The translations under genes and the position numbers were made by a program. A stretch of 64,000 bases of DNA from Pristiophorus japonicus (lineage: Eukaryota): positions 318,432,001 through 318,496,000 of the forward strand of contig NC_091979.1 in assembly GCF_044704955.1 (NCBI RefSeq). The letters run 5' to 3'. Each line of letters begins with the position of its first letter. Within the stretch, counting starts at the first letter, position 1. Of the stretch, positions 2,730 through 57,370 are shown one piece after another. A model generated the notes under the pieces. The model searched no databases. It worked only from the letters and a program-made list of their open reading frames with translations, and had not been told where the DNA came from.

Positions 2730-2806
2730 TATGGCAGGGGGATGGGAACCAATGCAGGGAGACAGAGGGAAACAAAAAGGAGGCAAAAGCAAAAGACAGA
2801 AAGGAG

Positions 2807-5951: not shown

Positions 5952-6039
5952 ATACAGGGTGGGATTAAGTGTAAGGGTAAACAGTATTGAGGTAAGTGAC
6001 GTAGCAGGAGTGGAGTGAAGCTGCGAGGGCTCAGACGCA

Positions 6040-34829: not shown

Positions 34830-37210
34830 AGGCTGGGAGCCAATGTATATCAGTGAGCAAAGGGGTGATGGGTGAATGGGACGGTGTGAGTTAGGATACG
34901 GGCAGCAGAATTTTGTAAGAATTCAAGTTCATGGAGAATGGCAGATGGGAGGCCGGCCGGGAGAGCATTGGAATAGTCAAGGCCAGAGGTAACAAAGGCA
35001 TGGATGAGGGTTCCAGCAGCAGCTGAGCTGAGGCAGGAGTACAGTTGTGTGATGTTACTGAGGTGGAAGTTAGCAGACTTGCTGATGGAGCTGACATGTG
35101 GTCGGAAGCTCATCTCGGTGTCAAATGTGACACCAAGGTTGCGAGTGGACTGGTTCAGCCTCAGACAGTTGCCAGGGAGAGGGATGGAGTCAGTGGCTTG
35201 GGAACGGAGTTTGTGGTGAAGATTCCCAATATTTAGTTGGAAGAAATTTCTGCTCATCCAGTACTGAGTTTTGGATAACCAGTGTGACCAATTAGAAACT
35301 GTGAATGGGTCGGGAGAGGTGGTAGTGAGGTAGAGCTGGGTGTTGTCAGCACAGATATGGAACCTGATGCTGTGTTGTGGGATGATTTCACCGATGGGCA
35401 GCATGATGTAGAGTAAAGGAGGGGGCCAGGGCTAGATCCTTGGGGAGTCCAGAGGTAATGCTGTGGTAGTGGGAAGAGAATCCATTGCAGATGATTGTCT
35501 GACTATGATTGGATAGAGAAGAATGGAACCAGGAGAGTGCAGACCCACCCAGCTGGAGGAGGGAGGAGAGGTGTTGCAAGTGATGTTGTGGTCAACCGTG
35601 TCAAAGGCTGTAGACAGGTTGAGAACAATGAAGAGGGTTAGGTTAACACAGTCACAGACACATAGAATGTCATTTGTGACTTTGATAAGGTTCGAATCAG
35701 TACTGGAGGAAAACTGATTGTAGGGTTTCAAACATGGATCTGCGGGAATGATCAGCATGGATTTGGGAGGCGATGGCACATTCAAGGACATTGGAGAGGA
35801 AAGGATTTTGGAGATGGGTCAGTGGGTTGCAGGGACAGAGGTGTTAGGAATGATTTTTTTTGAGGAGAAGGATGATGAAAGCAGATGTGAAGGGCTGGGG
35901 GACAGTACTTGAGGAGATTTAACAATATCTGCTGTTATGGGGGCCAGGAAGGGAAGTTGGGCGGTTATCAATTTGGTAACAATAGGGTTCGAGTGAGCAG
36001 GAGGTGGGTCGAATAGACAAGGGGAGCTTGGAGTGGGCATGAGGTGAGATTGGGGAGAAATGGAGAAATATGCAAGTTCAGGGCTAGAGCAGAGGGAAAC
36101 CATAGGTGAAGTTTGACCTGGTGGGCTCGGTGAAAAGACGGAAGCAGGTGATGCGGCTGAACGGATGGTCTCAATGTTTGTGACCAAAAAATCTATGACC
36201 TCCTCACACTTGTTTTTGGAGATGAGGGTGGAAGAGGCAGGAAGAGGGATTTGGGAAGACTGTGTGTCAATAGAATAGAAGCCAGGGGCTTTCAATGCCT
36301 TCCAGAAAGATCGTGGAAAGGTGAGCATTTTTGGCAGAGGAGCGCAGGGCCCGATAATACTTTATATGCTGCAGTCAGAGCTGGCAATGAATAGCGAAAC
36401 CATTTGTTTACCATAAAAATTCATGTCTGCATCCCTTGGGCTTGAGGGAGCAGTGATGAGGGCCGTACCAGGGAGAAGAACCAGAGTGAAAGAGATTAAT
36501 GGTTTAAATGGGGACAAGAGCATCAGAGGTGGAGGTGAGGGAGTGATTGAGCAGATCAGTAAATGAAGAAATGTTGTGATCAATGGAGGGACAAATGCGA
36601 GGCAGTTGAGAATTTGAAAGTGCAGTGTTAAGTGACTTGGGGAGAGTTTTTTTTACAGTGGCAGACACAGAACGAAGTGAAGTTGTGAGGGGAAAGGGGG
36701 ATGTGTGTTGTGAGCAATACTAGGAAGTGATCAGAGATGGCCTTATCTGTGATTGACACGGGGGGAACAGCGAGGCCAAGTGAGGAGGCAAGGTCGAGGG
36801 GATGGCCATGAATATGGGTAGGGGAGTTTATATGAAGGGAAAGATTAAGTGAGGATATGAGGGTAATGAACTCAGAGGTGAGAGAGAATGTTGATTTAAG
36901 ATGGAGGTTGAAATCACCGAAGATGAGAAATCAGTTGGTGCAGAGACTAATGGAGGAAAGCAGTGAAGATATCTCGGTGGAAATTTGGCTCTGTATTTGG
37001 CTGGGCATTAGAGAATGAGGATTTTAAATTTGAGAGAGGTAGAACAAAGTGGGATGGTCAAAGGGAGAGAAGATGCCAGAGAAGTACAGAGAACTACCTC
37101 GGTGTGATTTGGTGATAAATATCACACCGCCACAGCGGCCGTTTGGGTGAGGCCAGTGGTGAAAGGTATAGCCTGGTGGGAAAGATTCACTTGGGGGAAG
37201 GCACCTTCAA
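34830..37210 (-). mobile_element. Old L2-clade LINE ORF2 remnant (copy 2, duplicated)
   Basis: Same motifs at +3159. Confidence 0.8.
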
Positions 37211-39888: not shown

Positions 39889-40880
39889 CAGGTACAACGT
39901 CCAGAATCCAGAATTCCCAAAACCAGAATTGTCCGAAAATTGGACAGTTTTGAAGCGGCCAAGGTGGCAACGGAGGGCAGTGCCGGGGGGCCACGGCCAG
40001 TGAGAATCGGCGGCCAGCGAGGAGCGGGGGATCGGCCGGTGGCGAGGAGCGGGGGATCGGCCGGCGGTGAGGAGCGGAGGATCGGCCGGCGGTGAGGAGC
40101 GGAGAATCGGCGGCCAGCGAGGAGCGGGGGATCGGCCGGCGGTGAGGAGCGGAGGATCGGCCGGTGGTGAGGAGCGGAGGATCGGCCGGTGGCGAGGAGC
40201 GGAGGATCGGCCGGCGGTGAGGAGCGGAGGATCGGCCGGTGGTGAGGAGCGGAGGATCGGCCGGTGGCGAGGAGCGGAGGATCGGCCGGCGGTGAGGAGC
40301 GGAGGATCGGCCGGCGGTGAGGAGCGGAGAATCGGCGGCCAGCGAGGAGCGGAGGATTGGCCGGTGGTGAGGAGCGGGGGATTGGCCGGCGGTGAGGAGC
40401 GGAGGATCGGCTGGCGGTGAGGAGCGGAGGATTGGCCGGCGGTGAGGAGCGGGGGATTGGCCGGCGGTGAGGAGCGGGGGATCGGCCGGCGGTGAGGAGC
40501 GGAGGATTGGCCGGCGGTGAGGAGCGGGGGATTGGCCGGCGATGAGGAGCGGAGGATTGGCCGGCGATGAGGAGCGGAGGATTGGCCGGTGGCGAGGAGT
40601 GGAGGATTGGCCGGCGGTGAGGAGTGGAGGATTGGCCGGCGGTGAGGAGTGGAGGATTGGCCGGCGGTGAGGAGCGGAGGATTGGCCGGCGGTGAGGAGC
40701 GGTGGATCGGCCGGCGGTGAGGAGTGGAGGATCGGCCGATGGCGAGGAGTGGAGGATTGGCCGGCGGTGAGGAGCGGAGGATTGGCCGGCGGTGAGGAGT
40801 GGAGGATTGGCCGATGGCGAGGAGCGGAGGATTGGCCGATGGCGAGGAGCGCCAACAGCGGATTTCAGACGTTGTACCTG
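39889..40880. mobile_element. Tc1/mariner-pogo-like MITE
   Basis: TIRs CAGGTACAACGTC (39889) and GACGTTGTACCTG (ends 40880). TA follows the right end; the left flank is TC. Confidence 0.75.
40000..40850 (+). repeat. 25-bp GC-rich minisatellite (GGCGGTGAGGAGCGGAGGATYGGCC), ~34 copies, inside the MITE
   Basis: Direct reading; period 25 (40621 and 40646). Confidence 0.93.
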
Positions 40881-41695: not shown

Positions 41696-43283
41696 AGGTG
41701 ACTGTGTATCATCTCCAATACCTTAAGTTCAGTTTCCAGCATTGCACGGACCTGAGAAAACCTCCACAGAAAGGCTGTTTCTGGTGCTGTTTCAAGGAGG
41801 TGATTTTCCATTCGGTGTAAATATGGTGTGAGGCATCTGCACCTCTCCCAATGTTAGGTTCTTCCACTGTCCAATTCCACGGAACTTTCCCAACCATTCC
41901 TCCCTAACCTTTCTCTAATAGCATTATGGCTACAGCTAACAGTGTAAGGGCCATGTGTCACTCCACAATCAACAGCTGTTCAGTTTACTGCCTGTGTTAA
42001 AGGCTGGTCTGAATGTTCCTTACAGAGCTGGTACAGTTCACTATCACAAAGTATGGACTATGAGTGACACTTACTGTCAGCATTAGCGCAGATCAATGAC
42101 ACAAATAAAATCGTAACTACAGTTTATTTTTATTGGTTATTTTAACACTCAGTCTCTGATATTACAGCAAATTAACATTTCTGCTGGGAAAAGCTATCTC
42201 TGCAACTATAAAGCTTTATTATTTTTTAACCATTTTAATCTATTACTTTATCATTTATCCATAAGTCACGCGGTAGAAATTAACCGCTTCCATTGAAGAG
42301 GCTGGAAATCAGGGAGCTGTGGGCGGCTCATTTCCCGGAGAGAGAGAACATAATCTTTATTCAGGCGTGATACCGACCATCCCGGACAAAGCGGGGAAAT
42401 CGGTGGGGACTGTACTCACAAATACTGAAGCAAAAGGCTGCTTCGAATAAAAATATTAACAGTATATATTAAATAAGGTAAGTCGGATGAGTATGCTGCC
42501 AAACTTGTTCATTGATCAGAGAGCATCACAGCATCTTTCAAACACTGGGGTAGAGTCTCTGCTAATTTGTGATAGTTTTATCAGCACAATCCAGTGAAAA
42601 CTGCTCAACCAGCGCAAAAGATCACGGGAACTCGAGCATGATTTACATCAAGTGTAAATCAAGTATTCCGTCATCTTTAACACTGGTTTAAAAATCTACA
42701 AAACTGGCCCGGCCCACAGATAGAAATAACGAGGATGGCGAGTTTCCACCGATTGCACCCGTTCGAGGAAGGTTTTCAAATTAAACTAATTGCCTTAGGC
42801 ACCAGGCACTAGTCGGCATGATTTAAAAGTTTTACATATTAAACATACTTTATTGACTTACAAACTGACTAGTGTATAACAATAAAACTAATAAATGGCT
42901 CAGTATAGTTTTCTTTTCAGACATTTCAGTTATCTTAAATCAGGTTTCCCACAGGTGAAAGGCTGGGCACTTCTATTAAAAATGCTTATTTTTTTGTCAT
43001 AATCAAACTCCAAGGCCTTTTCAAAGCATTCAATAGCTTCGCACTTCTCCCCATCCAGCTGGTGTAGTAACCCAGGAACACCAAAGGCCTTGCTGTCTCT
43101 GGGATTCCTGTCAATTTGTTTTGATACAATCTTTCTCAAATTTTCGTGACACAATTGCCAACCTTTTGTGCCTTGTTCAATTGTAAATCCTTCCAGAAAA
43201 TGGATGATAGCATTTGATTCAGATTCTTTCTAGTGCAGTTCAAAAAACCCAATCTGCAAAGACACTGCCTGCTGTTTATCAGG

Positions 43284-44378
43284 ACATAATAACATAAGAA
43301 CATAAGAAATAGGAGCAGGAGTAGGCCACCTGGCCCCATGAACCTGCTCCGCCATTTAATATTAAGGCTGATCTGATAATGGACTCAGCTCCACATCCCT
43401 GACCACTCCCCATAACTCCTTGTTCCCTTATCGCTCAAAAATCTGTCTATCTCCACCTTAAATATATTCAATGACCCAGCCTCCACAGTGCTCTGGGGCA
43501 GAGAATTCCATAGATTTACAACCCTCTGAGAGAAGAAATTCCTCCTCAACTCAGTTTTAAATGGGTGGCCCCTTATTCTGAGACTATGTGCCCTAGTTTT
43601 AGTTTCCCCTATGAGTGGAAATATCCTCACTGCATCCACCTTGTCAAGCCCCCTAATTATCTTATATGTTTCGATAAGATACCTCTCATTCTTCTGAACT
43701 CCAATGAGTATTGGCCCAACTTACTCAACCTACCTCCATAAGTCAACCCCCTCAACTGCGGAATCAACCAAATGAACCTTCTCTGAACAGCCTCCAATGC
43801 AAGTATATCCTTCCTTAAATATGGAAGCCAAAATTGTACGCAGTACTCGATAGGTTGGCCTCACCAATATCCTGTACAGTTGTAGCAGGACTTTGCTGCT
43901 TTTATACTCTATCCCCCTTGCAATAAAGGCCAACATTCCATTTGCCTTCCTGATTACTTGCATACTAACTTTTTGTGTTTCATGCACAAGGACCCCCAGT
44001 TCCCTCTGTACAGCAGCACTTTGCAATTTTTTTTCATTTAAATTATAATTTGCTTTTCTATTTTTTCTGCCAAAGTGGATAACCTCACATTTTCCCACAT
44101 TATACTATATCTGCCAAATGTTTGCCTGTCTATATCGCTTTGCAGATTTTTTGTGTCCTCACTATTTGCTTTCCTGGCCATCTTTGTATCATCAGCAAAC
44201 TTGGCTACATTACACTTGGTCCCTTCATCCAAGTCGTTAATATAGATTGTAAATAGTTGAGGCCACAGCAACGATCCCTGCGGCACCCCACTCGTCACTG
44301 TTTGCCAACCAGAAAATGACCCATTTATCCCAACTCTCTGTTTTTGTTCGTCAGCCAATCCTCTATCCATGCCAACAT
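43284..44378 (-). mobile_element. 5'-truncated CR1 inside IFIT, tail to the left
   Basis: Tail (CATAAGAA)n at 43284-43310; GVPQG, FADD and QRVVNLWN on the minus strand. Confidence 0.9.
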
Positions 44379-45788
44379 GCTAGTTGGATCCAAAATTGGT
44401 TCAGAGGTAAGAAGCAAAGGGTAATGGTTGATGGATGTTTTTGTGACTGGAAGGATGTTTCCAGTGGAGTCCGCAGGGCTCAGTACTGGGTCCCTTGCTT
44501 TTTGTGGTATACATCAATGATCTAGATTTGATTATAGGGAGTATGATTAAGAAGTTTGCAGATGACACTAAAATTGGCTGTGTGGTCGTTAATGAAGCAG
44601 AAAGTCATGGGCTGCAGGAGGATATCAATCTACTGGTCAGGTGAGCAGAGCAGTGGCAAATGGAATTTAATTTGGAGAAGTGTGAGGTAATGCACTTTGA
44701 GAGGGCTAATAAGGAAAGGATATACACATTAAGCGGTAGACCATGGAAAAGATGAATAAAGGGATCTTGGAGTGCTTGTCCACAGATCCCTGAAAGTAAG
44801 GTGGATAAGGTGGTGAAGAAGGCATACGGAATGGTTGCCTTTCTTGGCTGAGGCACATAATACAAGAGCAGGGAGGTTATGCTTAAAATGTATAATACTT
44901 TGGTTAGGCCACAGCTGGAGTACTGCGTGCAGTTCTGGTCGCCGTATTATAGGAAGGATGTGATTGCAATAGAGAGGGTGCAGAGGAGATTTGCTAGGAT
45001 GCTGCCTGGAATGGAGAAACTTAGCTATGCGGATAGATTGGATAGGCTGGGTTTGTTCTCATTGGAACAGAGGAGGTTGAGAGGAGACCTCATTGAGGTG
45101 TACAAACTTTTGAGGGGCCTGGATATAGTGGATAGCAAGGGCCTATTTCCCTTGGTGGTGGGTTCAATTATGAGGGGGCATAGTTTTAAGGTGGTTGGTG
45201 GAAGGTTCAGAGGGGATTTGAGGGGTGGCTTTTTCAAGCAGAGGGTTGTGGGGGTCTGGAACTTAGTGCCTGGAAGGGTGGTGGATGTAGAAACCCTCAA
45301 CGCATTTAAAAGGTGCTTGGATGTGCACTTAAAGTGCCGCAATCTGCAGGGTTACACGGACCTAAAGCTGGTAAGTGGGATTAGACTGGATAACCTGTTG
45401 GCAGGCACAGCTATGATGGTAAGTACTGCAGGGAATCGAATATATCCAGGGTGATCTCCTGGACGAGTTTCGATTACTTGGATGGGTTGGAGAGGAATGT
45501 TCCGAGATATTTTTTCCCCAATTGACCTGGGTTTTTATCTGTTTTTTGCCTTTCCCAGGAGATCACATGGCTCCGGTTGGGGAGGAGTGTAGAATGTTTC
45601 GGTGCAAGGGGTGTCGCATTTGTGTGGGGCTGACTGGTTGGGCTGGGTGCTCTTTACCTTTCTGCCATTGTTCATTGATCATACGTTTATATGTAACTTT
45701 CAGGGCTGCTGACTGAGGGCCGTATGTTTCTTTGTCGGCCGGTGTGGACACGATGGGCCGAAATGGCCTCCTTCTGCGTTGTAGATTT
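44379..45788 (+). mobile_element. 5'-truncated CR1 of a different family inside IFIT, tail to the right
   Basis: WIQNW..KQRV, FADD, RPQLEYCVQFWSP and RRLRGDLIE; 3' end GATGGGCCGAAATGGCCTCCTTCTG. Confidence 0.88.
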
Positions 45789-47079
45789 GCAATTGTGCAA
45801 AAATAAATGATGGCTTCTGCTCAAATGCCTTTTCAAAATAGTACTTGCATTGATTGATCAACTCAGCTTTGAAAAGCAGGATTGCGAGGGGCTTTGCTGC
45901 CTGGATTTTTGTTCAGTTCAAATAGTTTTTTTCTGTAACACTGACCTATTTGGTGGTGTATGAAGGTAGAGTTTGGGGTAATTTCTAATGCTTTCTTCAA
46001 CAGCTCCACAGCTTTTTCCACATCTCCTCTTCTGTAAAATTTTGCTGCATAACGAGTTACATATGGAAGATCAGGGGACTTCTGCAATGCTTGTTCAACT
46101 AATTCGTGTTCTTCCACCTTTTGATTGAACTCTTGTAGTTTTAGAGCCAACATCACCATGGCTACAGAGTCATCTGGATCAAGTCCCCACACGTCGCAAC
46201 TGCTTCACTGATTGGCTGCGGTCACCACTCTCTGGGGTACGAGAAAACGTGTCCACACGAAACAGAACAGTCGCATAGCCAACGTTCCATTCAGTGTCAT
46301 CAGGATCATCCTCCAGAGTCTTCTCAAAACATTCCTTTGCCTCTTCATAGTATTGACTAGGAGAATTCAACAGTGACCAACCCTTCTCCCCGTATACTTC
46401 TGGTCTCAGTGCTGTATACCGAGTAAATTGTTTACAGATCATCTCCAGCTTGTCGAGGTAGGACTGGGCCTCTGTCAGTTGGCCCATGTGATAATATACC
46501 CAGGCATAGTTTCCATAGGTGATGATGCTTCTTCTTTCAAATTCATGTTCATGATTCTCCCTCAGAATCTTTTCAGCTTCCTTTAAGTTTTGAATTGCCC
46601 CTTTGAATTGCCTTGCAGACAGTTTACAAATGCGAGGTGGTTGTCAGACCTGGCCTGATAATTCACACCAGCCTGTATTAAATCTTGTAATCTATACTTC
46701 ATGTCGTCCAAGTCAATGCTGTCTCTCTGTGGGCCCCACGTGAAGTGACATTGAAGCTGGCTGAGTTTTGCTTTCAAGCAATCATTCAGTGTGTTGCTGT
46801 TGGAGAACAAAATAATCAAAGCCCATCTTATGTGTATCTAACTTACATTTTTAGCTCATATATAATCAACATAGCAATGCTGGTAAAGTCAGAATAGCAG
46901 AACAGATGAGCAGCTCAGTGCACATGGGCCCAGAACACTTCCCGACAGCCTCACTGCCTGGCATCCCTCAGTTCGGGGGAAACCCATTGGAATCCTGTAA
47001 TGGTCCCGGAGGCAATAACAAATGAACAATTGGCTCATGAGTGTCAGCAGAAATCCATGATCATCCATTAGTCTGATCA

Positions 47080-47440: not shown

Positions 47441-47455
47441 ACACTGGGGAAAGCG

Positions 47456-47868
47456 GGCTCGGGGAATGGGAGACTGGGGAATGGGGGCTCGGGGAGAGGG
47501 TGACTGGGAAATGGGGACTCGGGGAGAGGGAAACTGGGGAATGGGGGCTCGGGGAGAGGGAGACTGGGGAATGGGGGCTCGGGGAGAGGGAGACTGGGGA
47601 ATGGGAGCTCGGGGAGAGGGAGACTGGGGAATGGGGGCTCGGGGAAAGGGAGACTGAGGAATGGGGGCTCGGGGAGAGGGAGACTGGGGAATGGGGGCTC
47701 GGGGAGAGGGAGATTGGGGAATGGGGGCTCGGGGAGAGGGAGACTGGGGAATGGGGGCTCGGGGAGAGGGAGACTGGGGAATGGGGGCTCGGGGAGAGGG
47801 AGACTGGGGAATGGGGGCTCGGGGAGAGGGGGAATGGGGGCTCGGGAGAGGGAGACTGGGGAATGGGT
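47456..47868 (+). repeat. 30-bp G-rich minisatellite (GGGGAGAGGGAGACTGGGGAATGGGGGCTC), ~14 copies
   Basis: Direct reading; four G-tracts per unit. Confidence 0.95.
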
Positions 47869-48025
47869 CAGGGGGGATCATGGTGAGGCCAGGCGGGAGG
47901 TAGAAGAGGCCAGGTTGAGTGTAATTTATTCTGTGGTGGCCTGGAGGAGCTGGACTGATCCCTGGGCTCCAGACAAGGTCACTGGGCCTCTCCAGCCCTG
48001 GCCTTCTCTCACACACCACAGCAAC

Positions 48026-48115
48026 TCCCTTCAGCCCCCTCCCAGCAGATCCCTTCAGCCCCCTCCCAGCAGATCCCTTCAGTCCCCTCGCAGCAGATCC
48101 CTTGAACCCCTCAGG
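48026..48115 (+). repeat. 24-bp C-rich tandem repeat, ~4 copies
   Basis: TCCCTTCAGCCCCCTCCCAGCAGA repeated. Confidence 0.8.
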
Positions 48116-48230
48116 AGATCGAGCTGCCGGGGGTGGGCAGAGCTTTCGGGGGGTTGGGAGTCGGGAAGTTGGGTTTGGAGGGTGGTGGGAGAACTCGGGA
48201 CCGGGAGAGGCGGGGATTATCTTTAACCTA

Positions 48231-48426
48231 CCCGGCAACTGATGATGCAGCTCGCAGTATTTGTCTGATTGGATAGTTCAATGTTTGGAAAGTTTATTTC
48301 GGCACCAACAAAAACTCTCCCCGTGTCTTTTCTACCCGGAGCCTATTGACTCACAGCCTGTTTTTATTGTAATTGGAGACAAATATACCCTCGAACCAAT
48401 CAGTTCGGAGGAGTCTGAGTGTAAAA
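48231..48426 (+). promoter_or_regulatory. MHC-type promoter: X box, X2-like site, Y box, AP-1 site, CCAAT box and TATA-like element
   Basis: X CCCGGCAACTGATG 48231-48244; TGATGCA 48243-48249; 20-nt spacer; Y CTGATTGG 48265-48272; TGACTCA 48347-48353; CCAATCAG 48396-48403; TGTAAAA 48420-48426. Confidence 0.75.
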
Positions 48427-48460
48427 CACTCTGCACTGGGCAAAGCGCACGAACAGATAG

Positions 48461-51400
48461 CACAGAGAGACAGTCCCAGAGACACAGTATCAGCACAGGG
48501 CACAGAGAGACAGTCCCAGAGACACAGTATCAGCACAGGGCACAGAGAGACAGTCCCAGAGACACAGTATCAGCACAGGGCACAGAGAGACAGTCCCAGA
48601 GACACAGTATCAGCACAGGGCACAGAGAGACAGTCCCAGAGACACAGTATCAGCACAGGGCACAGAGACAGTCCCGGAGACACAGTATCAGCACAGGGCA
48701 CAGAGAGACAGTCCCAGAGACACAGTATCAGCACAGGGCACCGAGAGACAGTCCCGGAGACACAGTATCAGCACAGGGCACAGAGAGACAGTCCCAGAGA
48801 GAGAGTATCAGCACAGGGCACAGAGACAGTCCCAGAGACACAATATCAGCACAGGGCACAGAGAGACAGTCCCAGAGACACAGTATCAGCACAGGGCACA
48901 GAGAGACAGTCCCAGAGACACAGTATCAGCACAGGGCACAGAGACAGTCCCAGAGACACAGTATCAGCACAGGGCACAGAGAGACAGTCCCAGAGACACA
49001 GTATCAGCACAGGGCACAGAGAGACAGTCCCAAAGACACAGTATCAGCACAGGGCACAGAGAGACAGTCCCGGAGACACAGTATCAGCACAGGGCACAGA
49101 GAGACAGTCCCAGAGACACAGTATCAGCACAGGGCACCGAGAGACAGTCCCGGAGACACAGTATCAGCACAGGGCACAGAGAGACAGTCCCAGAGACACA
49201 GTATCAGCACAGGGCACCGAGAGACAGTCCCGGAGACACAGTATCAGCACAGGGCACAGAGAGACAGTCCCAGAGAGAGAGTATCAGCACAGGGCACAGA
49301 GACAGTCCCAGAGACACAATATCAGCACAGGGCACAGAGAGACAGTCCCAGAGACACAGTATCAGCACAGGGCACAGAGAGACAGTCCCAGAGACACAGT
49401 ATCAGCACAGAGCACAGAGAGACAGTCCCAGAGACACAGTATCAGCACAGGGCACAGAGTGACAGTCCCAGAGACACAGTATCAGCACAGGGCACAGAGA
49501 CAGTCCCAGGGACATAGTATCAGCACAGGGCACAGAGAGACAGTCCCAGAGACACAGTATCAGCACAGGGCACAGAGACAGTCCCAGGGACACAGTATCA
49601 GCACAGGCACAGAGAGTCAGTCCCAGAGACACAGTATCAGCATAGGGCACAGAGAAACAGTCCCGGAGACACAGTATCAGCATAGGGCACAGAGAGACAG
49701 TCCCGGAGACACAGTACCAGCACAGGGCACAGAGACAGTCCCAGAGACACAGTATCAGCACAGGGCACAGAGAGACAATCCCAGAGACACAGTATCAGCA
49801 CAGGGCATAGAGACAGTCCCAGAGACACAGTATCAGCACAGGGCACAGAGACAGTCCCAGAGACACAGTATCAGCACAGGGCAAAGAGAGACAGTCCCAG
49901 AGACACAGTATCAGCACAGGGCACCGAGAGACAGTCCCGGAGACACAGTATCAGCACAGGGCACAGAGAGACAGTCCCAGAGACAGAGTATCAGCACAGG
50001 GCACAGAGAGACAGTCCCAGAGACAGAGTATCAGCACAGGGCACAGAGACAGTCCTAGAGACACAATATCAGCACAGGGCACAGAGAGACAGTCTCAGAG
50101 ACACAGTATCAGCACAGGGCACAGAGAGACAGTCTCAGAGACACAGTATCAGCACAGGGCACAGAGAGACAGTCTCAGAGACACAGTATCAGCACAGGGC
50201 ACAGAGAGACAGTCCCAGAGACACAGTATCAGCACAGGGCACAGAGAGACAGTCCCGGAGACACAGTATCAGCACAGGCACAGAGAGTCAGTCCCAGAGA
50301 CACAGTATCAGCACAGGGCACAGAGAGACAATCCCAGAGACACAGTATCAGCACAGGGCACAGAGACAGTCCCAGAGACACAGTATCAGCACAGGGCACA
50401 GAGAGACAGTCCCAGAGACACAGTATCAGCACAGGGCACAGAGAGACAGTCCCAGAGACACTGTATCAGCACAGGGCACAGAGACAGTCCCAGAGACACA
50501 ATATCAGCACAGGGCACAGAGAGACAATCCCAGAGACACAGTATCAGCACAGGGCACAGAGAGACAGTCCCAGAGACACAGTGTCAGCACAGAGCACAGA
50601 GAGACAGTCCCAGAGACACAGTATCAGCACAGGGCACAGAGAGACAGTCCCAGAGACACAGTATCAGCACAGGGCACAGAGACAGTCCCAGGGACATAGT
50701 ATCAGCACAGGGCACAGAGAGACAGTCCCGGAGACACAGTATCAGCACAGGCACAGAGATTCAGTCCCAGAGACACAGTATCAGCATAGGGCACAGAGAG
50801 ACAGTCCCAGAGACACAGTATCAGCACAGGGCACAGAGACAGTCCCAGAGACACAGTATCAGCACAGGGCACAGAGAGACAGTCCCAGAGACACAGTATC
50901 AGCACAGGGCACAGAGAGACAGTCCCAGAGACACAGTATCAGCACAGGGCACAGAGAGACAGTCCCAGAGACACAGTATCAGCACAGGGCACAGAGAGAC
51001 AGTCCCAGAGACACAGTATCAGCACAGGGCACCGAGAGACAGTCCCGGAGACACAGTATCAGCACAGGGCAGAGAGAGACAGTCCCAGAGACACAGTATC
51101 AGCACAGGGCACAGAGAGACAGTCCCAGAGACACAGTATCAGCACAGGGCACCGAGAGACAGTCCCGGAGACACAGTATCAGCACAGGGCACAGAGAGAC
51201 AGTCCCAGAGAGAGAGTATCAGCACAGGGCACAGAGACAGTCCCAGAGACACAATATCAGCACAGGGCACAGAGAGACAGTCCCAGAGACACAGTATCAG
51301 CACAGGGCACAGAGAGACAGTCCCAGAGACACAGTATCAGCACAGGGCACAGAGTGACAGTCCCAGAGACACAGTATCAGCACAGGGCACAGAGACAGTC

Positions 51401-53361
51401 CCAGGGACATAGTATCAGCACAGGGCACAGAGAGACAGTCCCGGAGACACAGTATCAGCACAGGCACAGAGAGTCAGTCCCAGAGACACAGTATCAGCAT
51501 AGGGCACAGAGAGACAGTCCCGGAGACACAGTACCAGCACAGGGCACAGAGACAGTCCCAGAGACACAGTATCGACACAGGGCACAGAGAGACAATCCCA
51601 GAGACACAGTATCAGCACAGGGCATAGAGACAGTCCCAGAGACACAGTATCAGCACAGGGCACAGAGAGACAGTCCCAGAGACAGAGTATCAGCACAGGG
51701 CACAGAGACAGTCCCAGAGACACAGTATCAGCACAGGGCACAGAGAGACAGTCCCAGAGACACAGTATCAGCACAGGGCACAGAGAGACAGTCCCAGAGA
51801 CACAGTATCAGCACAGGGCACAGAGAGACAGTCCCAGAGACACAGTATCAGCACAGGGCACAGAGAGACAGTCCCAGAGACACAGTATTAGCACAGGGCA
51901 CAGAGAGACAGTCCCGGAGACACAGTATCAGCACAGGCACAGAGAGTCAGTCCCAGAGACACAGTATCAGCATAGGGCACAGAGAGACAGTCCCGGAGAC
52001 ACAGTATCAGCATAGGGCACAGAGAGACAGTCCCAGAGACACAGTATCAGCACAGGGCACAGAGAGACAATCCCGGAGACACAGTATCAGCACAGGGCAT
52101 AGAGACAGTCCCAGAGACACAGTATCAGCACAGGGCACAGAGACAGTCCCAGAGACACAGTATCAGCACAGGGCACAGAGAGACAGTCCAAGAGACACAG
52201 TATCAGCACAGGCACAGAGATTCAGTCCCAGAGACACAGTATCAGCACTGGGCACAGAGAGACAGTCCCAGAGACACAGTATCAGCACAGGGCACAGAGA
52301 GACAGTCCCAGAGACACAGTATCAGCACAGGGCACAGAGAGACAGTCCCAGAGACACAGTATCAGCACAGGGCACAGAGAGACAGTCCCAGAGAAACTGT
52401 ATCAGCACAGGGCACAGAGACAGTCCCAGAGACACAATATCAGCACAGGGCACAGAGAGACAATCCCAGAGACACAGTATCAGCACAGGGCACAGAGAGA
52501 CAGTCCCAGAGACACAGTATCAGCACAGAGCACAGAGAGACAGTCCCAGAGACACAGTATCAGCACAGGGCACAGAGAGACAGTCCCAGAGACACAGTAT
52601 CAGCACAGGGCACAGAGACAGTCCCAGAGACACAGTATCAGCACAGGGCACAGAGAGACAGTCCCAGAGACACAGTATCAGCACAGGGCACAGAGACAGT
52701 CCCAGAGACACAGTATCAGCACAGGGCACAGAGACAGTCCCAGAGACACAGTATCAGCACAGAGCACAGAGAGACAGTCCCAGAGACACAGTATCAGCAC
52801 AGAGCACAGAGAGACAGTCCCAGAGACATAGTATCAGCACAGGGCACAGAGAGACAGTCCCGGAGACACAGTATCAGCACAGGCACAGAGATTCAGTCCC
52901 AGAGACACAGTATCAGCATAGGGCACAGAGAGACAGTCCCGGAGACACAGTATCAGCACAGGGCACAGAGAGACAGTCCCGGAGACACAGTACCAGCACA
53001 GGGCACAGAGACAGTCCCAGAGACACAGTATCGACACAGGGCACAGAGAGACAGTCCCAGAGACACAGTATCAGCACAGGGCATAGAGACAGTCCCAGAG
53101 ACACAGTATCAGCACAGGACACAGAGACAGTCCCAGAGACACAGTATCAGCACAGGGCACAGAGAGACAGTCCAAGAGACACAGTATCAGCACAGGGCAC
53201 AGAGAGACAGTCCCAGAGACACAGTATCAGCACTGGGCACAGAGAGACAGTCCCAGAGACACAGTATCAGCACTGGGCACAGAGAGACAGTCCCAGAGAC
53301 ACAGTATCAGCACAGGGCACAGAGAGACAGTCCCAGAGACACAGTATCGGCACTGGGCACA
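48461..53361 (+). repeat. 40-bp minisatellite (CACAGAGAGACAGTCCCAGAGACACAGTATCAGCACAGGG; 38-bp variants), ~120-125 copies
   Basis: Direct reading; only 3 T per 40 nt on the + strand. Confidence 0.97.
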
Positions 53362-53458
53362 GGAATCACACGGTCTGAATTGGGCGCAGCTCACGGACGG
53401 TCTCTCGGAAAAGGATTGCCTGCAAACTGCTCATCCCAGCCTGTCGAGGGAAGTAACA

Positions 53459-54526
53459 ATGTTTGGACTGACCGTGCTGGCCCTTCTGTGTGGAGAGGTG
53501 TGTGCAGGCTCTCACTCCCTGCGGTACATGCACACGGCTATCACTCCGCTCCCGGGCATTGCTGAGTTCACCGATGTGGGTTATGTGGATGACCAGCAGT
53601 TTATTTACTATGACAGTGTGAGCCGGCAGTACACCCCGCGGCAGCGGTGGATCAGGGAGAGCGAGGGCGCCGAGTACTGGGAGCGCTACACACAGATCCT
53701 GCGGGGCAAGGAGCAGGTGATGAAAGGCAACATTCAGACCGTCTTAACCCGCACCAACCAGACCGGCGGGATCCACACGCTGCAGAGGTTGTGCGGCTGT
53801 GAGCTGCGGGATGACGGCACCACCAGCGGCTTCTGGCAGTACGGCTGGGACGGGAAGGACCTGATCAGCTTCGACAAGGATCGCCTGGTGTGGGTCACCC
53901 CGGTACCGTGGGGAGAGATCACCAAGAACAAGTGGGACCAGGACAGGGCCGAAATGCAGCAGGACAAAAGTTACCTGGAGCAGGAGTGCATCGAGTGGCT
54001 GAAGAAATACCTGAAGGCTGGAGAGAGAGAACTGGGAGCTGTTGCTCCTCAAGTGTTTCCTTCTGTGGACAAGGCGTCAAATATTAAAGCCCCCCAACTC
54101 TCCTGTCTCCTCACAGGATTTTACCCTCGCGAAATCCAAGTGACCCTCCTGAGAAATGGCGAGCCAATCAGGGACACGGAATCCACGGGCATCCTGCCCA
54201 ACCACGATGGCACCTACCAGCTCACGACATGGGCTCAGATCGAGCCCGCGGATGGAGCCACCTATTCCTGTCAGTATGAGCAGAGCGGCCAAGCAGGAGG
54301 GAAGACCCGAGACTGGGACGGGACGTTCCGAGTGACTCCAGGATCGCCAGAGGGAACAAATAGGGGTTTGATTGTTGGAATTGTGATTGCTGCCGTCGCC
54401 CTGATTGCTCTTGTGATCGGTGCGGTTGTGTGGAAGAGGAGAGGAGGAGAGGAGACATCTGGTTACAGCCCAGCGAACCCTGCTGAACGAGGAGAATTAT
54501 CCCCAAACTCAGCAGCCCAGTCCTGA
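53459..54526 (+). CDS. MHC class I heavy chain, single-exon, classical (UAA-like) peptide-binding residues
   Basis: Signal peptide; GSHSLRY; alpha1 N-glycosylation NQT; alpha2 CGC...YLEQECIEWL; Ig-C1 alpha3 LSCLLTGFYP...NHDGTYQL...YSC; TM LIVGIVIAAVALIALVIGAVVW; KRR stop-transfer; cytoplasmic GYSPA. Uninterrupted 355 codons, A at -3. Confidence 0.96.
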   Translation: MFGLTVLALLCGEVCAGSHSLRYMHTAITPLPGIAEFTDVGYVDDQQFIYYDSVSRQYTPRQRWIRESEGAEYWERYTQILRGKEQVMKGNIQTVLTRTNQTGGIHTLQRLCGCELRDDGTTSGFWQYGWDGKDLISFDKDRLVWVTPVPWGEITKNKWDQDRAEMQQDKSYLEQECIEWLKKYLKAGERELGAVAPQVFPSVDKASNIKAPQLSCLLTGFYPREIQVTLLRNGEPIRDTESTGILPNHDGTYQLTTWAQIEPADGATYSCQYEQSGQAGGKTRDWDGTFRVTPGSPEGTNRGLIVGIVIAAVALIALVIGAVVWKRRGGEETSGYSPANPAERGELSPNSAAQS

Positions 54527-54769
54527 GGCTGATCCCGAAGTGAAGTTCACTGGGACTAGAATCTGGACTTGCTGTGTCGCAAGGAGGGTTCATTCAGAAG
54601 CAATCCACGATTCTGCATCTTCATTTCGTTTGATTGTCACTGGCTGCTGCCAGTGTTAATAGTAATCGGTAATGTATCTATCATTGAGTGGGTTTGGGGA
54701 TATTTTCTTTTTGGTGATTGGATAGAAATCTCCAGTTGGGTCTTTTGGTGTTTAATGTAAATGAGATGT

Positions 54770-54840
54770 GTCGATTTCGGCACGGGCTGGATGGCCAAAT
54801 GGTCGTCTTCCGTGCTGTAACCATTCTATGATTCTATGTA
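54770..54840 (+). mobile_element. Short CR1/SINE-type 3' tail downstream of the class I ORF
   Basis: GGCCAAATGGTCGTCTTCCGTGCTGTAACCATTCTATGATTCTATG. Confidence 0.6.
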
Positions 54841-54847
54841 TGGTGGC

Positions 54848-55508
54848 CGGGGGAGAGGGAGACTGGGAATGGGGGCTGGGGGAGAGAGGGAGACTGGGAA
54901 TGGGGTCTTGGGGAGACGGAGACTGGGAATGGGGGCTGGGGGAGAGAGGGAGACTGGGAATGGGGTCTTGGGGAGAGAGAGACTGGGGAATGGGGGCTCA
55001 GGGAGAGGGAGACTGGGGAATGGGGGCTTGGGGAGAGAGAGACTGGGTAATGGGGGCTCAGGGAGAGGGAGACTTGGGAATGGGGCCTCGGGGAGAGAGA
55101 GACTGGGGAATGGGGGCTTGGGGAGCGGGAGACTGGGGAATGGGGGCTTGGGGAGACGGAGACTTGGGAATGGGGCCTCGGGGAGAGAGAGACTGGGGAA
55201 TGGGGGCTCGGGGCTCGGGAGACTGGGGAATGGGGGCTTGGGGAGAGGGAGACTGGGGAATGGGGGCTTGGGGAGAGAGGGAGACTGGGGAATGGGGGCT
55301 CTGGGAGAAGGAGACTGGGGAATGGGGGCTTGGGGAGAGAGGGAGACTGGGGAATGGGGGCTCTGGGAGAGGGAGACTGGGGAATGGGGGCTTGGGGAGA
55401 GAGGGAGACTGGGGAATGGGGGCTCTGGGAGAGGGAGACTGGGGAATGGGGGCTCGGGGAGAGAGAGACTGGGGAATGGGTGCTCGGGGAGAGGGAGACT
55501 GGGGAATG
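54848..55508 (+). repeat. 30/31-bp G-rich minisatellite, ~22 copies, same family and orientation as 47456-47868
   Basis: GGGAGAGGGAGACTGGGGAATGGGGGCTY units. Confidence 0.95.
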
Positions 55509-55844
55509 GCGTGGGTGTGGGTTCTAGTATTTCCCCCAGAGCCGGGAGCAGCAGCAACGTGGTGAGTGGGAGTGACACTGAGAGAGGAGCAGCCAGTAAA
55601 GAGGTGAGTGAAACCTGGGGACCTTACTGTGGGTAAATAGTGAAAGATTATTTCCAGTGGTGGGCGAATGGGGAACTAGGGAACGGAAACCAAAGATTCT
55701 AAAACCTAAAGGGAATGTGATAAATATTTGAAAAGGAAGAATGTTATAAGATCTGGGGGTGGGGTGGGCGGGGGGGAATGGGATTACAGAAGAGAGTGCG
55801 AGCTCCGAGGCCGAATGATCTCCTCCTGTGCAGTCATTTCTATA

Positions 55845-57370
55845 AATGCATTCCCCACTCTGCTCAATGTGCTGAAGTTGCAGCCCTGGTGACAGCAATC
55901 CAAATGACTTATGACATACCTGTTAATGCCTGGCCAGATAGTGCCTATGCGATTAACACTTTGTTACCTTTATCGCTGTATGCTCGGAACACGATCAGCC
56001 CCTGTTTATGTTGGTAAGAAGTCTCACTCACCATCTTTGAACTTACACACCCGGAGCAACTCACAAGCAGATCATGCTGCTACAGATGCCACCGTTAACC
56101 TCTGGCAAGCTCCTACCCCTCCCTTAAGGTCTGTCCCGAGTATTCAAGGTGGGGACATCGATCTCCCGGTCTCTAGGCCAGTTATCTTCCCTATGCGGTT
56201 GTTATTGCATGGCATCGGGATGGATGTCCGTTGTCTCAGCCCACTCCATGGGCTGTGGACACACAATTGGCTCCAGATCAGTCTGGGAAATCTGCCCTCC
56301 TGTTAATGTATGGGCCCTGCTTGCGGTGGCTATCATCTGATCTCCCAGTTGTCTGTGTTCCCCCATCCATGGCACCCAAAATGTTTGATCTCCTCCATTG
56401 ACACCCGGTGGGAGGACACTATTCAGCCGATGCAACTGTTCAGAAACTACACAAATTTGCATGGCATCATAATTGTGTTACTGACGTCACTCATAGAGTG
56501 AATGTTGCCTGCCCTGTTTACAGCAAAACCCAAGTGCCACATGAAGCGAGCACTGTTGGGTAGTCCCCCTTCTCCCGAGGGGGCCAAGGTCCCACCTTCA
56601 AATTGACTTTATAGGCCCTTGCCTACAGGGCCTTCTGGGTTGTGGTATTGTCTGGTTGTAGTTGATACGTTTACAAAATGGATGGAGTCTTTTCCATGTA
56701 AAACAAACACAGTATTGACAGCAGCTCGCCTATTATTGGGTGAGGTGAGCTGCAGGCAGGGAGTGCCAATTCAGGCTGATACCGCACAAAGTTTTACCGA
56801 GCTGCAACGGACAATGAGTATGTTGCATAAACTTCATATCTCCCACCGTCCACAATCATCTGGAATGGTGGAAAGAGGAAATCGAATTCTGAAAATTATG
56901 TTAAACAAATTTGGTGCAGATCACCCCACCAAATGGTCTAGCATGCTGTCAATGTGCCAGATAGTTATTAAATCCACCCCGCATAGCACAACGGGTATTT
57001 CACCCTACCAAGCTATGACTGGGCGACTAATGCGAATGCCAGCCCATCTGTTAACCCCTTCAGTTACACCCTTAGTACAGGGAACTGCCAACCAAAAATG
57101 GCTTGAAATGTAGCCAGACAGACAGGGAAGTCAAGAAGCCAGGCATAGAAACACTTCGATAAGCAGTTCCGACCTTTTGAACATCAAGTGGGAGATATCG
57201 TAATGCTACTAAACTATGGGAAGCAACAACATTGCTTCGAACCAAGGTGGAATGGCCCCATTCCCGATTATTGACGGGGTCAGTCCTTCGGTCTATCTGT
57301 TGCAATTCCCTGGGGAAAAAGGGGAGGAACAAGTGGGGTAAATAGTACCATATCAATCAGTTGAAAACCG
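55845..57370 (+). mobile_element. Degenerate retroviral-type pol (RNase H plus integrase)
   Basis: HSAQCAEVAAL..DSAYA (RNase H); LQIDFIGPLP..LVVVDTFTKW..HRPQSSGMVERGNRILK..STPHSTTGISPY (integrase). Possible PPT AAGGAGGGGAA plus LTR start TGTTAG at ~58343-58361. Confidence 0.75.

What the first reader, a model, noticed from the sequence alone, without database searches (positions are those of the whole stretch)
53459..54526. Completely intronless, intact MHC class I gene with classical peptide-anchoring residues
Seen: leader, alpha1, alpha2, alpha3, TM and cytoplasmic tail are in one 355-codon ORF with no intron. Established: vertebrate class I genes normally put each domain on its own exon. 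By motif position the anchors Y7, Y59, R84, T143, K146, W147, Y159 and Y171 (HLA-A2 numbering) are all kept, as are W167, the N86 glycan site and the tail YxxA; position 123 is L rather than F/Y. I see no poly(A) tract or TSD, and the ORF is intact while nearly everything around it is decayed. Inference: a functional, cDNA-derived, classical-type class I gene under selection. I recall reduced-exon class I genes being reported in cartilaginous fish, so novelty depends on which lineage this belongs to.
Basis: partly seen in the sequence, partly recalled or inferred. Interest (0 to 1): 0.82.

Follow-up and report, generated by a model that had tools for sequence, protein, structure and literature searches.

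The report
Retro-copied single-exon shark MHC class I gene
A Japanese sawshark carries an intact antigen-presenting (MHC class I) gene whose whole protein is coded without introns; it looks like an RNA-derived copy pasted in by a CR1 jumping-gene mechanism next to a dead interferon-response gene and later multiplied, so it is an unusual route to a new immune gene, but whether it works is not shown.

Summary
Window 53459-54526 (+) is one 355-codon ORF encoding leader, alpha1-3, TM and tail of an MHC class I chain, with all eight peptide-anchor residues, both disulfides and the N86 site.

Three corrections. The annotated Pristiophorus japonicus model for this locus has a 6.5-kb 5' intron, so only the coding part is intronless. 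There is a retroposition signature: the unit (47942-54842) ends in a CR1-type hairpin plus ATTCTATG x2 instead of poly(A). It is bracketed by a motif (ATTCTRTG..GTGGCC) found nowhere else in the window, and it splits a 30-bp minisatellite whose halves continue in phase. The unit also carries about 100 nt of native 5' leader, a 4.9-kb ATG-free satellite and an X1-X2-Y promoter-like block.

A frameshifted IFIT pseudogene lies head-to-head with it; no MHC neighbours are in the window. Heterodontus isoforms of the same clade skip exactly alpha2, so relatives have domain-border introns. Six near-identical sawshark proteins exist; the nearest other one is 73% identical.

Best reading: a CR1-mediated retrocopy of a classical-type class I transcript, later duplicated. 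Function is plausible but unproven.

The parts
53459..54526 (+). Single coding exon of the MHC class I heavy chain, 355 aa plus stop. Leader is aa 1-16; alpha1 about aa 17-103 (53507-53767); alpha2 about aa 104-194 (53768-54040); alpha3 about aa 195-286 (54041-54316); connecting peptide, TM and tail run to 54523.
   Evidence: ORF; Pfam; PDB; fold; anchor residues. Domain borders are placed from the Heterodontus isoform that lacks exactly alpha2 and the one that diverges after alpha3. The predicted TM helix is residues 302-329.
53363..53458 (+). Native 5' leader between the satellite and the ATG. It holds two AG acceptors used in annotated models (53389|53390 and 53439|53440).
   Evidence: The best hits of the Heterodontus P0012 leader in the whole window fall at 53396-53461 (E 1e-4) and 53356-53394 (E 7e-3); decoy hits reach at most 16 bits. 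Acceptors were inferred from P0001 and P0124. One Logan contig begins exactly at 53389.
48461..53362 (+). 40-bp satellite of about 124 units. There is no ATG on the + strand anywhere between the promoter-like block and the start codon.
   Evidence: TRF. There are 0 ATGs in 48440-53458; a simulated P of 0.0025 overstates significance because the units are not independent. Both edges carry GCACTGGGCA.
48231..48426 (+). MHC-type promoter-like block: X1-like CCCGGCAACTGATG, X2-like TGATGCA and Y box CTGATTGG at 48231-48273, then TGACTCA-N18-ATTGG and CCAAT at 48347-48400.
   Evidence: Motif scan. There are three CCAAT-type boxes in 146 nt (Poisson P 0.009). The X2-N-Y arrangement occurs once in the window. 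This is a motif match against consensus sequences recalled from memory; promoter activity was not tested.
47942..48230 (+). Unique 5' part of the inserted unit, upstream of the promoter-like block. It contains a 24-bp repeat of about 3 copies.
   Evidence: No other copy in the window. It starts directly after the left junction motif.
54527..54777 (+). Unique 3' UTR without a canonical poly(A) signal.
   Evidence: No AATAAA or ATTAAA in 54527-54900. It is unique in the window. It is covered, contiguously with the coding end, by a 560-nt Logan contig spanning 54276-54835.
54778..54842 (+). CR1-type 3' end: hairpin at 54778-54817, then ATTCTATG x2 and TATG.
   Evidence: It aligns with the tails of the window's own LINEs. 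Hairpin free energy is -30.1 kcal/mol, z -4.0, with the same architecture as a LINE tail in the window. The 54793-54838 stretch is shared by many unrelated contigs. The octamer matches the CR1 consensus ATTCTRTG (PMC8665684).
47928..47941 (+). Left junction repeat ATTCTGTG-GTGGCC, the candidate target-site duplication, left copy.
   Evidence: The pattern ATTCTRTG(N0-4)GTGGCC occurs only here and at 54831-54848 in 64 kb; 0.01 expected by chance.
54831..54848 (+). Right junction repeat ATTCTATG-TATG-GTGGCC, the candidate target-site duplication, right copy, merged with the new CR1 tail.
47868..47935 (+). Short older CR1-tail-like remnant ending in ATTCTGTG; the probable landing pad for the class I insertion.
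   Evidence: Weak alignment to LINE tails. It lies between the end of the left minisatellite half and the left junction motif.
47443..47867 (.). Left half of the 30-bp minisatellite that was split by the insertion.
   Evidence: TRF. It is 88-91% identical to the right half. It ends at unit phase 24.
54845..55509 (.). Right half of the same 30-bp minisatellite.
   Evidence: It resumes at unit phase 25. The joined halves score 93 against the periodic consensus, above all 30 control offsets (maximum 91).
46877..46882 (+). 3' end of the annotated upstream exon 1a (ATGCTG|GTAAAG), outside the inserted unit.
   Evidence: Joined to 53390 it gives MLLTDGLSEKDCLQTAHPSLSREVTM, identical to the N-terminus of P0001 and P0121.
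47000..47070 (+). Alternative upstream exon 1b (donor TA|GT), used in the annotated model of paralogue P0124.
   Evidence: It translates to MVPEAITNEQLAHECQQKSMIIH(Y), which differs from P0124 by two substitutions.
42933..46837 (-). IFIT pseudogene head-to-head with the class I gene. It shows an in-frame stop, at least three frame changes and a LINE insertion.
   Evidence: Six-frame reading. The piece 46182-46643(-) hits IFIT1/5/2/3 structures with E 2e-37 to 1e-28. The neighbouring piece gives weak TPR hits.

Best explanation
This is one copy of a small, recently amplified sawshark family of MHC class I genes whose whole coding sequence lies on one exon.

Inferred origin:
1. A transcript of a classical-type (UAA-like) class I gene had its coding introns spliced out.
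2. It began upstream of the gene's own X-Y promoter, so it carried the promoter, the leader satellite and the native 5' leader.
3. It ended at a CR1 fragment in or after its 3' UTR.
4. CR1 reverse transcriptase recognised that hairpin-plus-octamer end and copied the RNA by target-primed reverse transcription. The landing site was the tail of an older CR1 remnant inside a 30-bp minisatellite, next to an IFIT gene.
5. The IFIT-plus-class-I block was later duplicated along the chromosome, and the leader satellite grew to 4.9 kb.

Today the locus is annotated as transcribed from exons near the dead IFIT gene and spliced over the promoter and satellite into acceptors in the old leader.

The encoded protein has everything needed to bind beta2-microglobulin and to hold peptide termini. 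It most likely acts as an oligomorphic, possibly interferon-linked, peptide-presenting class I molecule expressed at a low level.

Shown: ORF, fold, anchor residues, CR1 end, junction motif, phase continuity, IFIT pseudogene, upstream exons, introns in relatives.
Inferred: the RNA intermediate and its upstream start, the order of events, expression of this particular copy, and function.
For: Gene and fold.

Species, and six proteins at 90% identity or more; next sawshark protein 73% identical.

Relatives in the same 100%-supported clade have introns at the domain borders. Heterodontus P0073 lacks exactly alpha2 and P0012 diverges after alpha3.

CR1-type 3' end:
- It aligns with the window's own LINE tails.
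- It has a hairpin with z -4.0 followed by ATTCTATG x2.
- It matches the published CR1 recognition structure (PMC8665684).
- It is shared by many unrelated contigs.

Junction motif only at the two ends of the unit, 0.01 expected.
Minisatellite halves 88-91% identical and exactly in phase across the unit.
Native leader retained.
Promoter-like X1-X2-Y block inside the unit.
IFIT pseudogene adjacent.
Upstream exons lie outside the unit but are shared by the paralogues' models, so duplication followed insertion.

Maintained constraint:
- Deviations at conserved columns are 2 of 57 and 7 of 91, both equal to the median of 83 homologues.
- The stem branch (0.25) is similar to the tips of P0005 (0.21) and Squalus (0.19).

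Probable transcripts: contigs at 99% identity or more cover 53698-54835.
Against: - No DNA of a parent gene or of the other copies could be fetched (look-up of encoding contigs closed). The boundaries of the unit rest on this one locus.
- A retrocopy that includes its promoter is atypical and needs an upstream-initiated transcript.
- The left 'older CR1 tail' aligns only weakly.
- The run type of the Logan contigs is not on record. Their depth for the family is about 1000-fold below a related class I gene, and no contig of 280 nt or more is identical to this copy.
- 5 kb of satellite separates the promoter-like block from the ATG.
- The annotated upstream ATG would place 25 residues in front of the signal peptide.
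- There is no poly(A) signal.
Confidence: 0.58

Rival explanations
1. Young processed pseudogene copies. The retrocopy and its duplicates are too recent to have decayed, and transcripts are by-products of neighbouring promoters; no protein function.
For: - Copies are about 99% identical.
- The family's contig depth is about 1/1000 of a related class I gene.
- The neighbourhood is decayed.
- 5 kb of satellite lies before the ATG.
- There is no poly(A) signal.
- 5' exons differ among copies, and one adds an in-frame upstream ATG.
Against: - The nearest other annotated sawshark class I is only 73% identical, yet the ORF shows no excess change at conserved columns (2 of 57, the median).
- All eight anchors, four cysteines and the glycan site are kept.
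- The stem branch is not accelerated.
- Six intact copies are annotated as coding.
- The few differences seen in near-identical contigs are denser in the UTRs than in the CDS, though the counts are small.
Confidence: 0.22
2. Intron loss in place. The original class I gene lost its coding introns by recombination with its own cDNA, keeping promoter, leader satellite and 5' intron. The gene was then moved and duplicated as DNA.
For: - A promoter-like X1-X2-Y block, the native leader and leader acceptors are all retained.
- Heterodontus relatives also have a tandem array abutting the same leader point, and an upstream exon spliced into the leader.
- cDNA-mediated intron loss typically spares 5' introns (established model; my own knowledge).
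Against: - It does not explain why homology ends exactly at a CR1 hairpin plus octamer tail.
- It does not explain the junction motif found only at the two ends.
- It does not explain the in-phase split of one minisatellite.
- The neighbours are an IFIT pseudogene and repeats, not MHC genes.
Confidence: 0.15
3. Assembly artefact or cDNA contamination of the genome assembly.
For: None specific, beyond the absence of introns.
Against: - The ORF is continuous with non-cDNA features: 4.9 kb of satellite, a promoter-like block, a CR1 tail and a minisatellite.
- The annotated 5' intron spans 6.5 kb of this same assembly.
- Several distinct paralogous proteins exist.
Confidence: 0.02

Closest known systems
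Shark classical-type class I (UAA; nurse shark Gici-UAA*01, PDB 6LUP; Squalus acanthias Q8HWH7; sawshark P0005)
   Same: Same domain order, fold, disulfides, N86 glycan site and all eight peptide-terminus anchors (YYRTKWYY). The ORF is 72-73% identical to the Squalus and sawshark P0005 proteins and sits with them in a 100%-supported clade.
   Different: The coding sequence has no introns, whereas clade relatives show exon skipping at the domain borders. It is multi-copy and almost invariant in the groove. Its neighbours are an IFIT pseudogene and repeats. Apparent expression is far lower than that of the P0005-like gene. The lineage name (UAA or another) could not be verified with named reference sequences.
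Teleost L-lineage MHC class I 'processed genes' (Dijkstra et al. 2007, as summarised in PMC4364491)
   Same: These are class I genes that lack the introns between alpha1, alpha2 and alpha3. They were proposed to come from retrotransposition of partially spliced mRNA, and they are multi-copy. Salmonid L genes respond to viral and interferon stimuli (title and abstract of PMC11695323), which parallels the IFIT neighbourhood here.
   Different: L-lineage molecules lack the peptide-terminus anchors and are thought to bind non-peptide ligands or none. This gene keeps all eight anchors. It belongs to a different phylogenetic lineage and taxon. A CR1 tail and junction repeat are documented here.
CR1-dependent retroposition (CR1 3' hairpin plus ATTCTRTG microsatellite recognised by the CR1 reverse transcriptase; Suh 2015, cited in PMC8665684)
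   Same: The unit ends in a stable hairpin followed by two exact ATTCTATG octamers, like the LINE tails in the same window.
   Different: The cargo is a spliced cellular mRNA with its promoter region, not a CR1 or a SINE. The literature uses the CR1 requirement to explain why such retrogenes are scarce in birds.
Elasmobranch nonclassical class Ib lineages (UBA, UDA, UEA, UFA; PMC10751288)
   Same: Multi-copy, little variation among copies, and probably restricted or low expression.
   Different: Those lineages map within the MHC in white shark, catshark and sawfish, and 'no MHC-Ia/b genes were found outside' it. This copy has no MHC neighbour within 64 kb. Its groove is classical in type, and it clusters with classical-type sequences.

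Membership tests
MHC class I heavy chain | alpha1/alpha2 peptide-binding superdomain plus a C1-set Ig alpha3 domain | tested here: met
   Pfam MHC_I 8e-53 and C1-set 1e-14. The AF2 model's top Foldseek hit is 6lup_A, E 2e-36, TM 0.92.
MHC class I heavy chain | Conserved disulfides (C101-C164, C203-C259), N86 glycosylation site, TM anchor and cytoplasmic tail | tested here: met
   C114/C177, C216/C271 and N100-Q-T are present. A helix is predicted at residues 302-329. The tail carries GYSPA.
Classical (class Ia) MHC class I | Eight peptide-terminus anchors Y7, Y59, Y/R84, T143, K146, W147, Y159, Y171 (definition in PMC4364491) | tested here: met
   YYRTKWYY, identical to 6LUP and the Triakis alleles.
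Classical (class Ia) MHC class I | High polymorphism concentrated in the groove | tested here: inconclusive
   No population data were available. The six paralogous proteins differ in the ectodomain only at I80N, D119G and A279E, which points to an oligomorphic family.
Classical (class Ia) MHC class I | Tight linkage to TAP/PSMB antigen-processing genes | tested here: not met
   The 64-kb window holds only an IFIT pseudogene, transposons and satellites. Linkage beyond the window was not testable.
Classical (class Ia) MHC class I | High, broad expression | tested here: inconclusive
   Family-specific contigs have depth 35-50, against 1e4-1e5 for a P0005-like gene. The runs are of unrecorded type and tissue.
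Processed retrogene (LINE-mediated) | Lacks the introns of the source gene | tested here: met
   One ORF spans all domains. Clade relatives skip exactly alpha2 and diverge after alpha3, so the lineage has domain-border introns. This is indirect, because no parent DNA was available.
Processed retrogene (LINE-mediated) | 3' end carries the tail that the mobilising LINE needs | tested here: met
   Hairpin plus ATTCTATG x2, as in the window's own LINEs and the published CR1 consensus.
Processed retrogene (LINE-mediated) | Target-site duplication and an interrupted target | tested here: met
   The junction motif occurs only at 47928-41 and 54831-48. The minisatellite halves are in phase. No empty site was available for confirmation.
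Processed retrogene (LINE-mediated) | Copy starts at the mRNA cap site and lacks the source promoter | tested here: not met
   About 520 bp upstream of the satellite lie inside the unit, including an X1-X2-Y-like block. An upstream-initiated transcript is needed, so this is an atypical retrocopy.
Teleost L-lineage class I | Groove lacks the peptide anchors; teleost-specific clade | tested here: not met
   Anchors are kept. The gene clusters inside shark class I. It resembles the L lineage in how it arose, but is not a member.

The most novel reading that the evidence does not exclude
A shark moved a peptide-presenting, classical-groove class I gene out of the MHC into an interferon-induced IFIT cluster. 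The gene travelled with its own X-Y promoter and leader, by CR1-mediated retroposition. It was then amplified as a working, interferon-coupled antigen-presentation module. This would be the first functional class I family outside the elasmobranch MHC, and a rare case of a CR1-made retrogene.
Probability: 0.3. Interest if true: 0.8.

Novelty: new variant of a known kind. Interest (0 to 1): 0.62.

Why it matters
Class I genes are a textbook case of one domain per exon. In elasmobranchs they have been reported to lie only within the MHC (PMC10751288).

A family of intact class I genes with a single coding exon and a classical groove, sitting beside IFIT genes, would show three things:
- Antigen-presenting genes can escape the MHC by retroposition in the oldest jawed vertebrates.
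- CR1-type LINEs, usually thought unable to make retrogenes, can do so when a host mRNA ends in a CR1 tail.
- Such a copy can carry its own promoter and later capture new 5' exons.

It parallels the teleost L lineage but keeps the peptide anchors, so it would be a natural test of what a class I molecule does once it is uncoupled from TAP/PSMB co-evolution. If the copies are merely young pseudogenes, the locus is still a clean worked example of CR1-mediated retroposition.

Tried and rejected
I could not fetch the other copies, P0005 or the relatives' loci, so there is no nucleotide phylogeny, no dN/dS, no parent search and no empty-site test.
- Homology between the sawshark 40-bp satellite and the Heterodontus leader repeat is rejected as unsupported. 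A reversed-sequence decoy scored higher (58 against 33 bits). Only the unique leader matches specifically.
- The ISRE/kB scan of 46.8-48.5 kb found only one ISRE core (47327-36, minus strand). It lies inside a LINE fragment, so I do not claim an interferon element.
- The bacterial-type promoter/terminator scan is irrelevant for a shark and gave nothing above shuffles.
- NCBIfam is a prokaryote-oriented library and gave only weak TPR hits for the IFIT pieces. The PDB search settled that point.
- Literature searches for intronless or retro-derived class I genes in sharks found nothing.
- Earlier-notes look-ups for TAP/PSMB, for a parent gene and for copy boundaries were blank.
- I first read a 6-8-bp TSD (TGGTGGCC). 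The pattern search and the phase analysis refined it to a nested insertion at an older CR1 tail.
Exon joins were only translated locally, to compare about 30 residues with the annotated N-termini.
Full report
**Observation.**
The window has a single ORF at 53459-54526 (+) of 355 codons. It matches Pfam MHC_I (8e-53, residues 17-192) and C1-set (1e-14). Its best solved relative is 6lup (5e-94), which is nurse shark Gici-UAA*01 (PMC8236899). An AlphaFold model built on 83 homologues has a mean pLDDT of 84.5, above 90 over most of alpha1-alpha3, and a predicted TM helix at residues 302-329. Its top Foldseek hit is 6lup_A (E 2e-36, TM 0.92).

The eight peptide-terminus anchors are defined in PMC4364491, with R84 being the norm in sharks. 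At those positions the ORF reads YYRTKWYY, identical to 6LUP and the Triakis alleles. Only 37 of 83 homologues keep all eight. tblastn of the protein against the window finds no other class I exon.

**Whose gene it is.**
The protein is 100% identical to a UniRef entry from Pristiophorus japonicus (P0001). That entry is 380 aa long and is one of six sawshark proteins at 90% identity or more (355-385 aa). These six differ from each other at only a handful of residues. Only I80N, D119G and A279E fall in the ectodomain. The next sawshark class I (P0005) is 73% identical, Squalus acanthias Q8HWH7 72% and Heptranchias 68%.

In a maximum-likelihood tree the family forms a tight cluster (tips about 0.005) on a 0.25 stem. 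It lies inside a 100%-supported clade with P0005, Squalus, Heptranchias and some Heterodontus, Scyliorhinus, Stegostoma and Chiloscyllium sequences. Deeper nodes are unresolved, and I could not attach a verified lineage name (UAA or other).

**Not entirely intronless.**
The 25 extra residues of P0001 are reproduced exactly by joining window 46877-46882 (ATGCTG|GTAAAG) to the acceptor at 53389|53390 and reading the 5' flank in frame. So the annotated transcript of this locus has a 6.5-kb 5' intron. The different N-terminus of paralogue P0124 is encoded, with two substitutions, at 47000-47070 (TA|GT donor), joined to a second acceptor at 53439|53440. Only the coding part is on one exon.

**Do relatives have introns?**
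There is indirect evidence from the Heterodontus members of the same clade. Isoform P0073 lacks exactly alpha2, and P0012 diverges right after alpha3. That is what exon skipping and intron retention at the domain-border introns would give. The lineage therefore has the usual introns, and the sawshark family lost them.

**Signature of the event.**
- *CR1-type 3' end.* There is no poly(A) tract and no AATAAA or ATTAAA after the stop. The 3' UTR ends in a 40-nt hairpin (54778-54817; -30.1 kcal/mol, z -4.0) followed by ATTCTATG x2. This aligns with, and has the same architecture as, the tails of the window's own EN/RT LINEs. It is the published CR1 recognition structure: a hairpin plus the ATTCTRTG microsatellite (PMC8665684). 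In the Logan contigs, 54793-54838 is shared by many unrelated sequences, as expected for a repeat tail.
- *Junction motif.* The motif ATTCTRTG(N0-4)GTGGCC occurs twice in 64 kb, at 47928-47941 and 54831-54848, against 0.01 expected.
- *Split minisatellite.* Outside these sites lie two halves of one 30-bp minisatellite (47443-47867 and 54845-55509), 88-91% identical. The left half ends at unit phase 24 and the right half resumes at phase 25. Joining them scores 93 against the periodic consensus, above all 30 control offsets (maximum 91).

My reading is a nested insertion. A short older CR1 tail (47868-47935, only weakly alignable) sat in the minisatellite. The class I RNA, which ended in its own CR1 tail, was then inserted at that tail by target-primed reverse transcription, duplicating ATTCTGTG..GTGGCC. 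The unit proper is 47942-54842.

**What the unit carries upstream of the ATG.**
- *Native leader, 53363-53458.* The 5' leader of Heterodontus P0012 is annotated as an in-frame N-terminal extension. Its best hits in the whole window fall at 53396-53461 (E 1e-4, 27 bits) and, for its last repeat unit, at 53356-53394 (22 bits). The two hits are adjacent, in order, and begin at the satellite boundary. Decoy hits reach at most 16 bits.
- *40-bp satellite, 4.9 kb.* It was found by TRF. There is no ATG on the + strand between 48440 and the start codon. The simulated P of 0.0025 overstates significance, because the repeat units are not independent. In Heterodontus a tandem array (18-aa period) abuts the same point of the leader, and P0010 splices an upstream exon into the leader. 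A repeat-prone leader and leader acceptors may therefore be native to this gene lineage. Homology between the two satellites themselves is not supported.
- *Unique 519 bp, 47942-48460.* This block has no other copy in the window. It holds X1-like CCCGGCAACTGATG, X2-like TGATGCA and Y-box CTGATTGG (48231-48273), followed by TGACTCA-N18-ATTGG and CCAAT (48347-48400). Three CCAAT-type boxes fall in 146 nt (P 0.009), and the X2-N-Y arrangement occurs only once in the window. This is a motif match to the MHC S-X-Y module as I recall it. Activity was not tested.

A retrocopy that contains its own promoter needs a transcript that began upstream of that promoter. That is the weakest link in the model.

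**Neighbourhood.**
On the minus strand, from 46837 down to 42933, lies an IFIT gene with an in-frame stop, at least three frame changes and a LINE insertion. One piece hits IFIT1/5/2/3 structures with E 2e-37 to 1e-28. The rest of the window is LINE, LTR and DNA-transposon debris and satellites. No TAP, PSMB or other MHC gene is present.

Exons 1a and 1b lie between the IFIT body and the minisatellite, outside the inserted unit. Yet the models of the paralogues use them too. So the IFIT-plus-class-I block was duplicated after the insertion.

Earlier notes of this scan report six more 1068-nt copies, one of them broken, spread from -1.8 to +0.84 Mb on the same chromosome among IFIT genes. They are leads that I did not check beyond this window. 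The number of intact copies matches the six annotated proteins. PMC10751288 reports that in three elasmobranchs no class I gene lies outside the MHC. Whether this chromosome carries the sawshark MHC could not be tested.

**Expression.**
Three public runs hold the stretch. All are kept as Logan contigs of unrecorded type. Their small contig sets (34-165 Mb), and short pieces 90-95% alike at depth 1e4-1e5, fit RNA libraries better than shark genomic DNA. The loose ends of those abundant pieces encode P0005-like residues (FNQGVKG, KEPNL), so they come from a related class I gene.

In these runs, contigs at 99% identity or more cover 53698-54835 at depth 35-50. That span includes the 3' UTR up to the CR1 tail. 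One contig begins exactly at the predicted acceptor, 53389. The family is therefore probably transcribed, at roughly 1/1000 of the related gene. No contig of 280 nt or more is identical to this copy, so expression of this particular copy is not shown.

**Constraint.**
No codon-level test was possible. Three indirect indications are available:
- The ORF deviates at 2 of 57 columns that are at least 90% conserved, and at 7 of 91 that are at least 80% conserved. Both counts equal the median of 83 homologues.
- The family's stem branch (0.25) is no longer than the tips of P0005 (0.21) and Squalus (0.19).
- The few differences seen in near-identical contigs are denser in the UTRs than in the CDS, though the counts are small.

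These fit continued constraint. They cannot separate constraint before the retroposition from constraint after it.

**Verdict.**
The ORF and its classical-type groove are real, and a cDNA origin is well supported, now with a mechanism (a CR1 tail, a junction repeat and a split minisatellite). The gene is not fully intronless at the transcript level. It is one of several near-identical copies beside IFIT genes. Function and selection remain inferences.

The closest precedents are the teleost L-lineage 'processed' class I genes, which lack the anchors, and CR1-dependent retroposition. I found no paper describing such a gene in cartilaginous fish. I rate it a new variant of a known kind, interest 0.62.

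Noticed in passing
window 48440-53458: 5 kb of leader, consisting of the 40-bp satellite plus its edges, has no ATG on the + strand, against 16 on the minus strand. This is compatible with a long uORF-free 5' UTR, or it may simply reflect a unit that lacks ATG. Both satellite edges carry GCACTGGGCA, suggesting the satellite expanded in place.
   Followed up: partly
proteins P0012/P0073 and P0010 (Heterodontus francisci), alignment A4: The annotated N-terminal extensions are translated 5' leaders. P0012 and P0073 read through at least five tandem units with an 18-aa period, directly upstream of a leader homologous to the sawshark's. P0010 splices an upstream exon into that leader. A repeat-prone, spliced leader may be an old feature of this class I clade.
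   Followed up: partly
window 42933-46837 (-): IFIT pseudogene head-to-head with the class I unit. It has an in-frame stop, frame changes and a LINE insertion. Its exon 1 and promoter were not located.
   Followed up: partly
window 17454-18045 and 20454-20990: Two arrays of the same 49-bp tandem repeat flank a LINE copy. The second array starts right at the LINE's TTTCTATG octamer tail.
   Followed up: no
window 31691-33169 and 34850-36328: Near-identical ORF pairs (184 aa and 169 aa) recur about 3.16 kb apart on the minus strand. This looks like a recent tandem duplication of a repeat-derived segment.
   Followed up: no
window 774-1596, 4561-5952, 25926-26250, 40019-40851: Further satellites with periods of 80/150/230/308 bp (the unit contains TATAAAAGG), 18 bp (77 copies), 133 bp (G-rich) and 25 bp (33 copies). 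An assembly gap (N run) lies at 25622-25806 and was left untouched.
   Followed up: no
window 1782-4477, 6830-8254, 29559-30668 (-), 56619-57113: Transposon genes: a LINE ORF1 with a GDSL-esterase-like domain followed by EN/RT; DUF4371 (hAT-type transposase-like); a gag aspartyl protease; and an integrase core.
   Followed up: partly
Read-laying runs X1 and X3 on window 53970 and 54365: Very deep contigs (1e4-1e5) that are 90-95% alike in alpha2-end, alpha3 and TM carry P0005-like codons but have F where P0005 has Y (AFNQGVKG). They probably come from an allele or paralogue of the main expressed sawshark class I gene.
   Followed up: no
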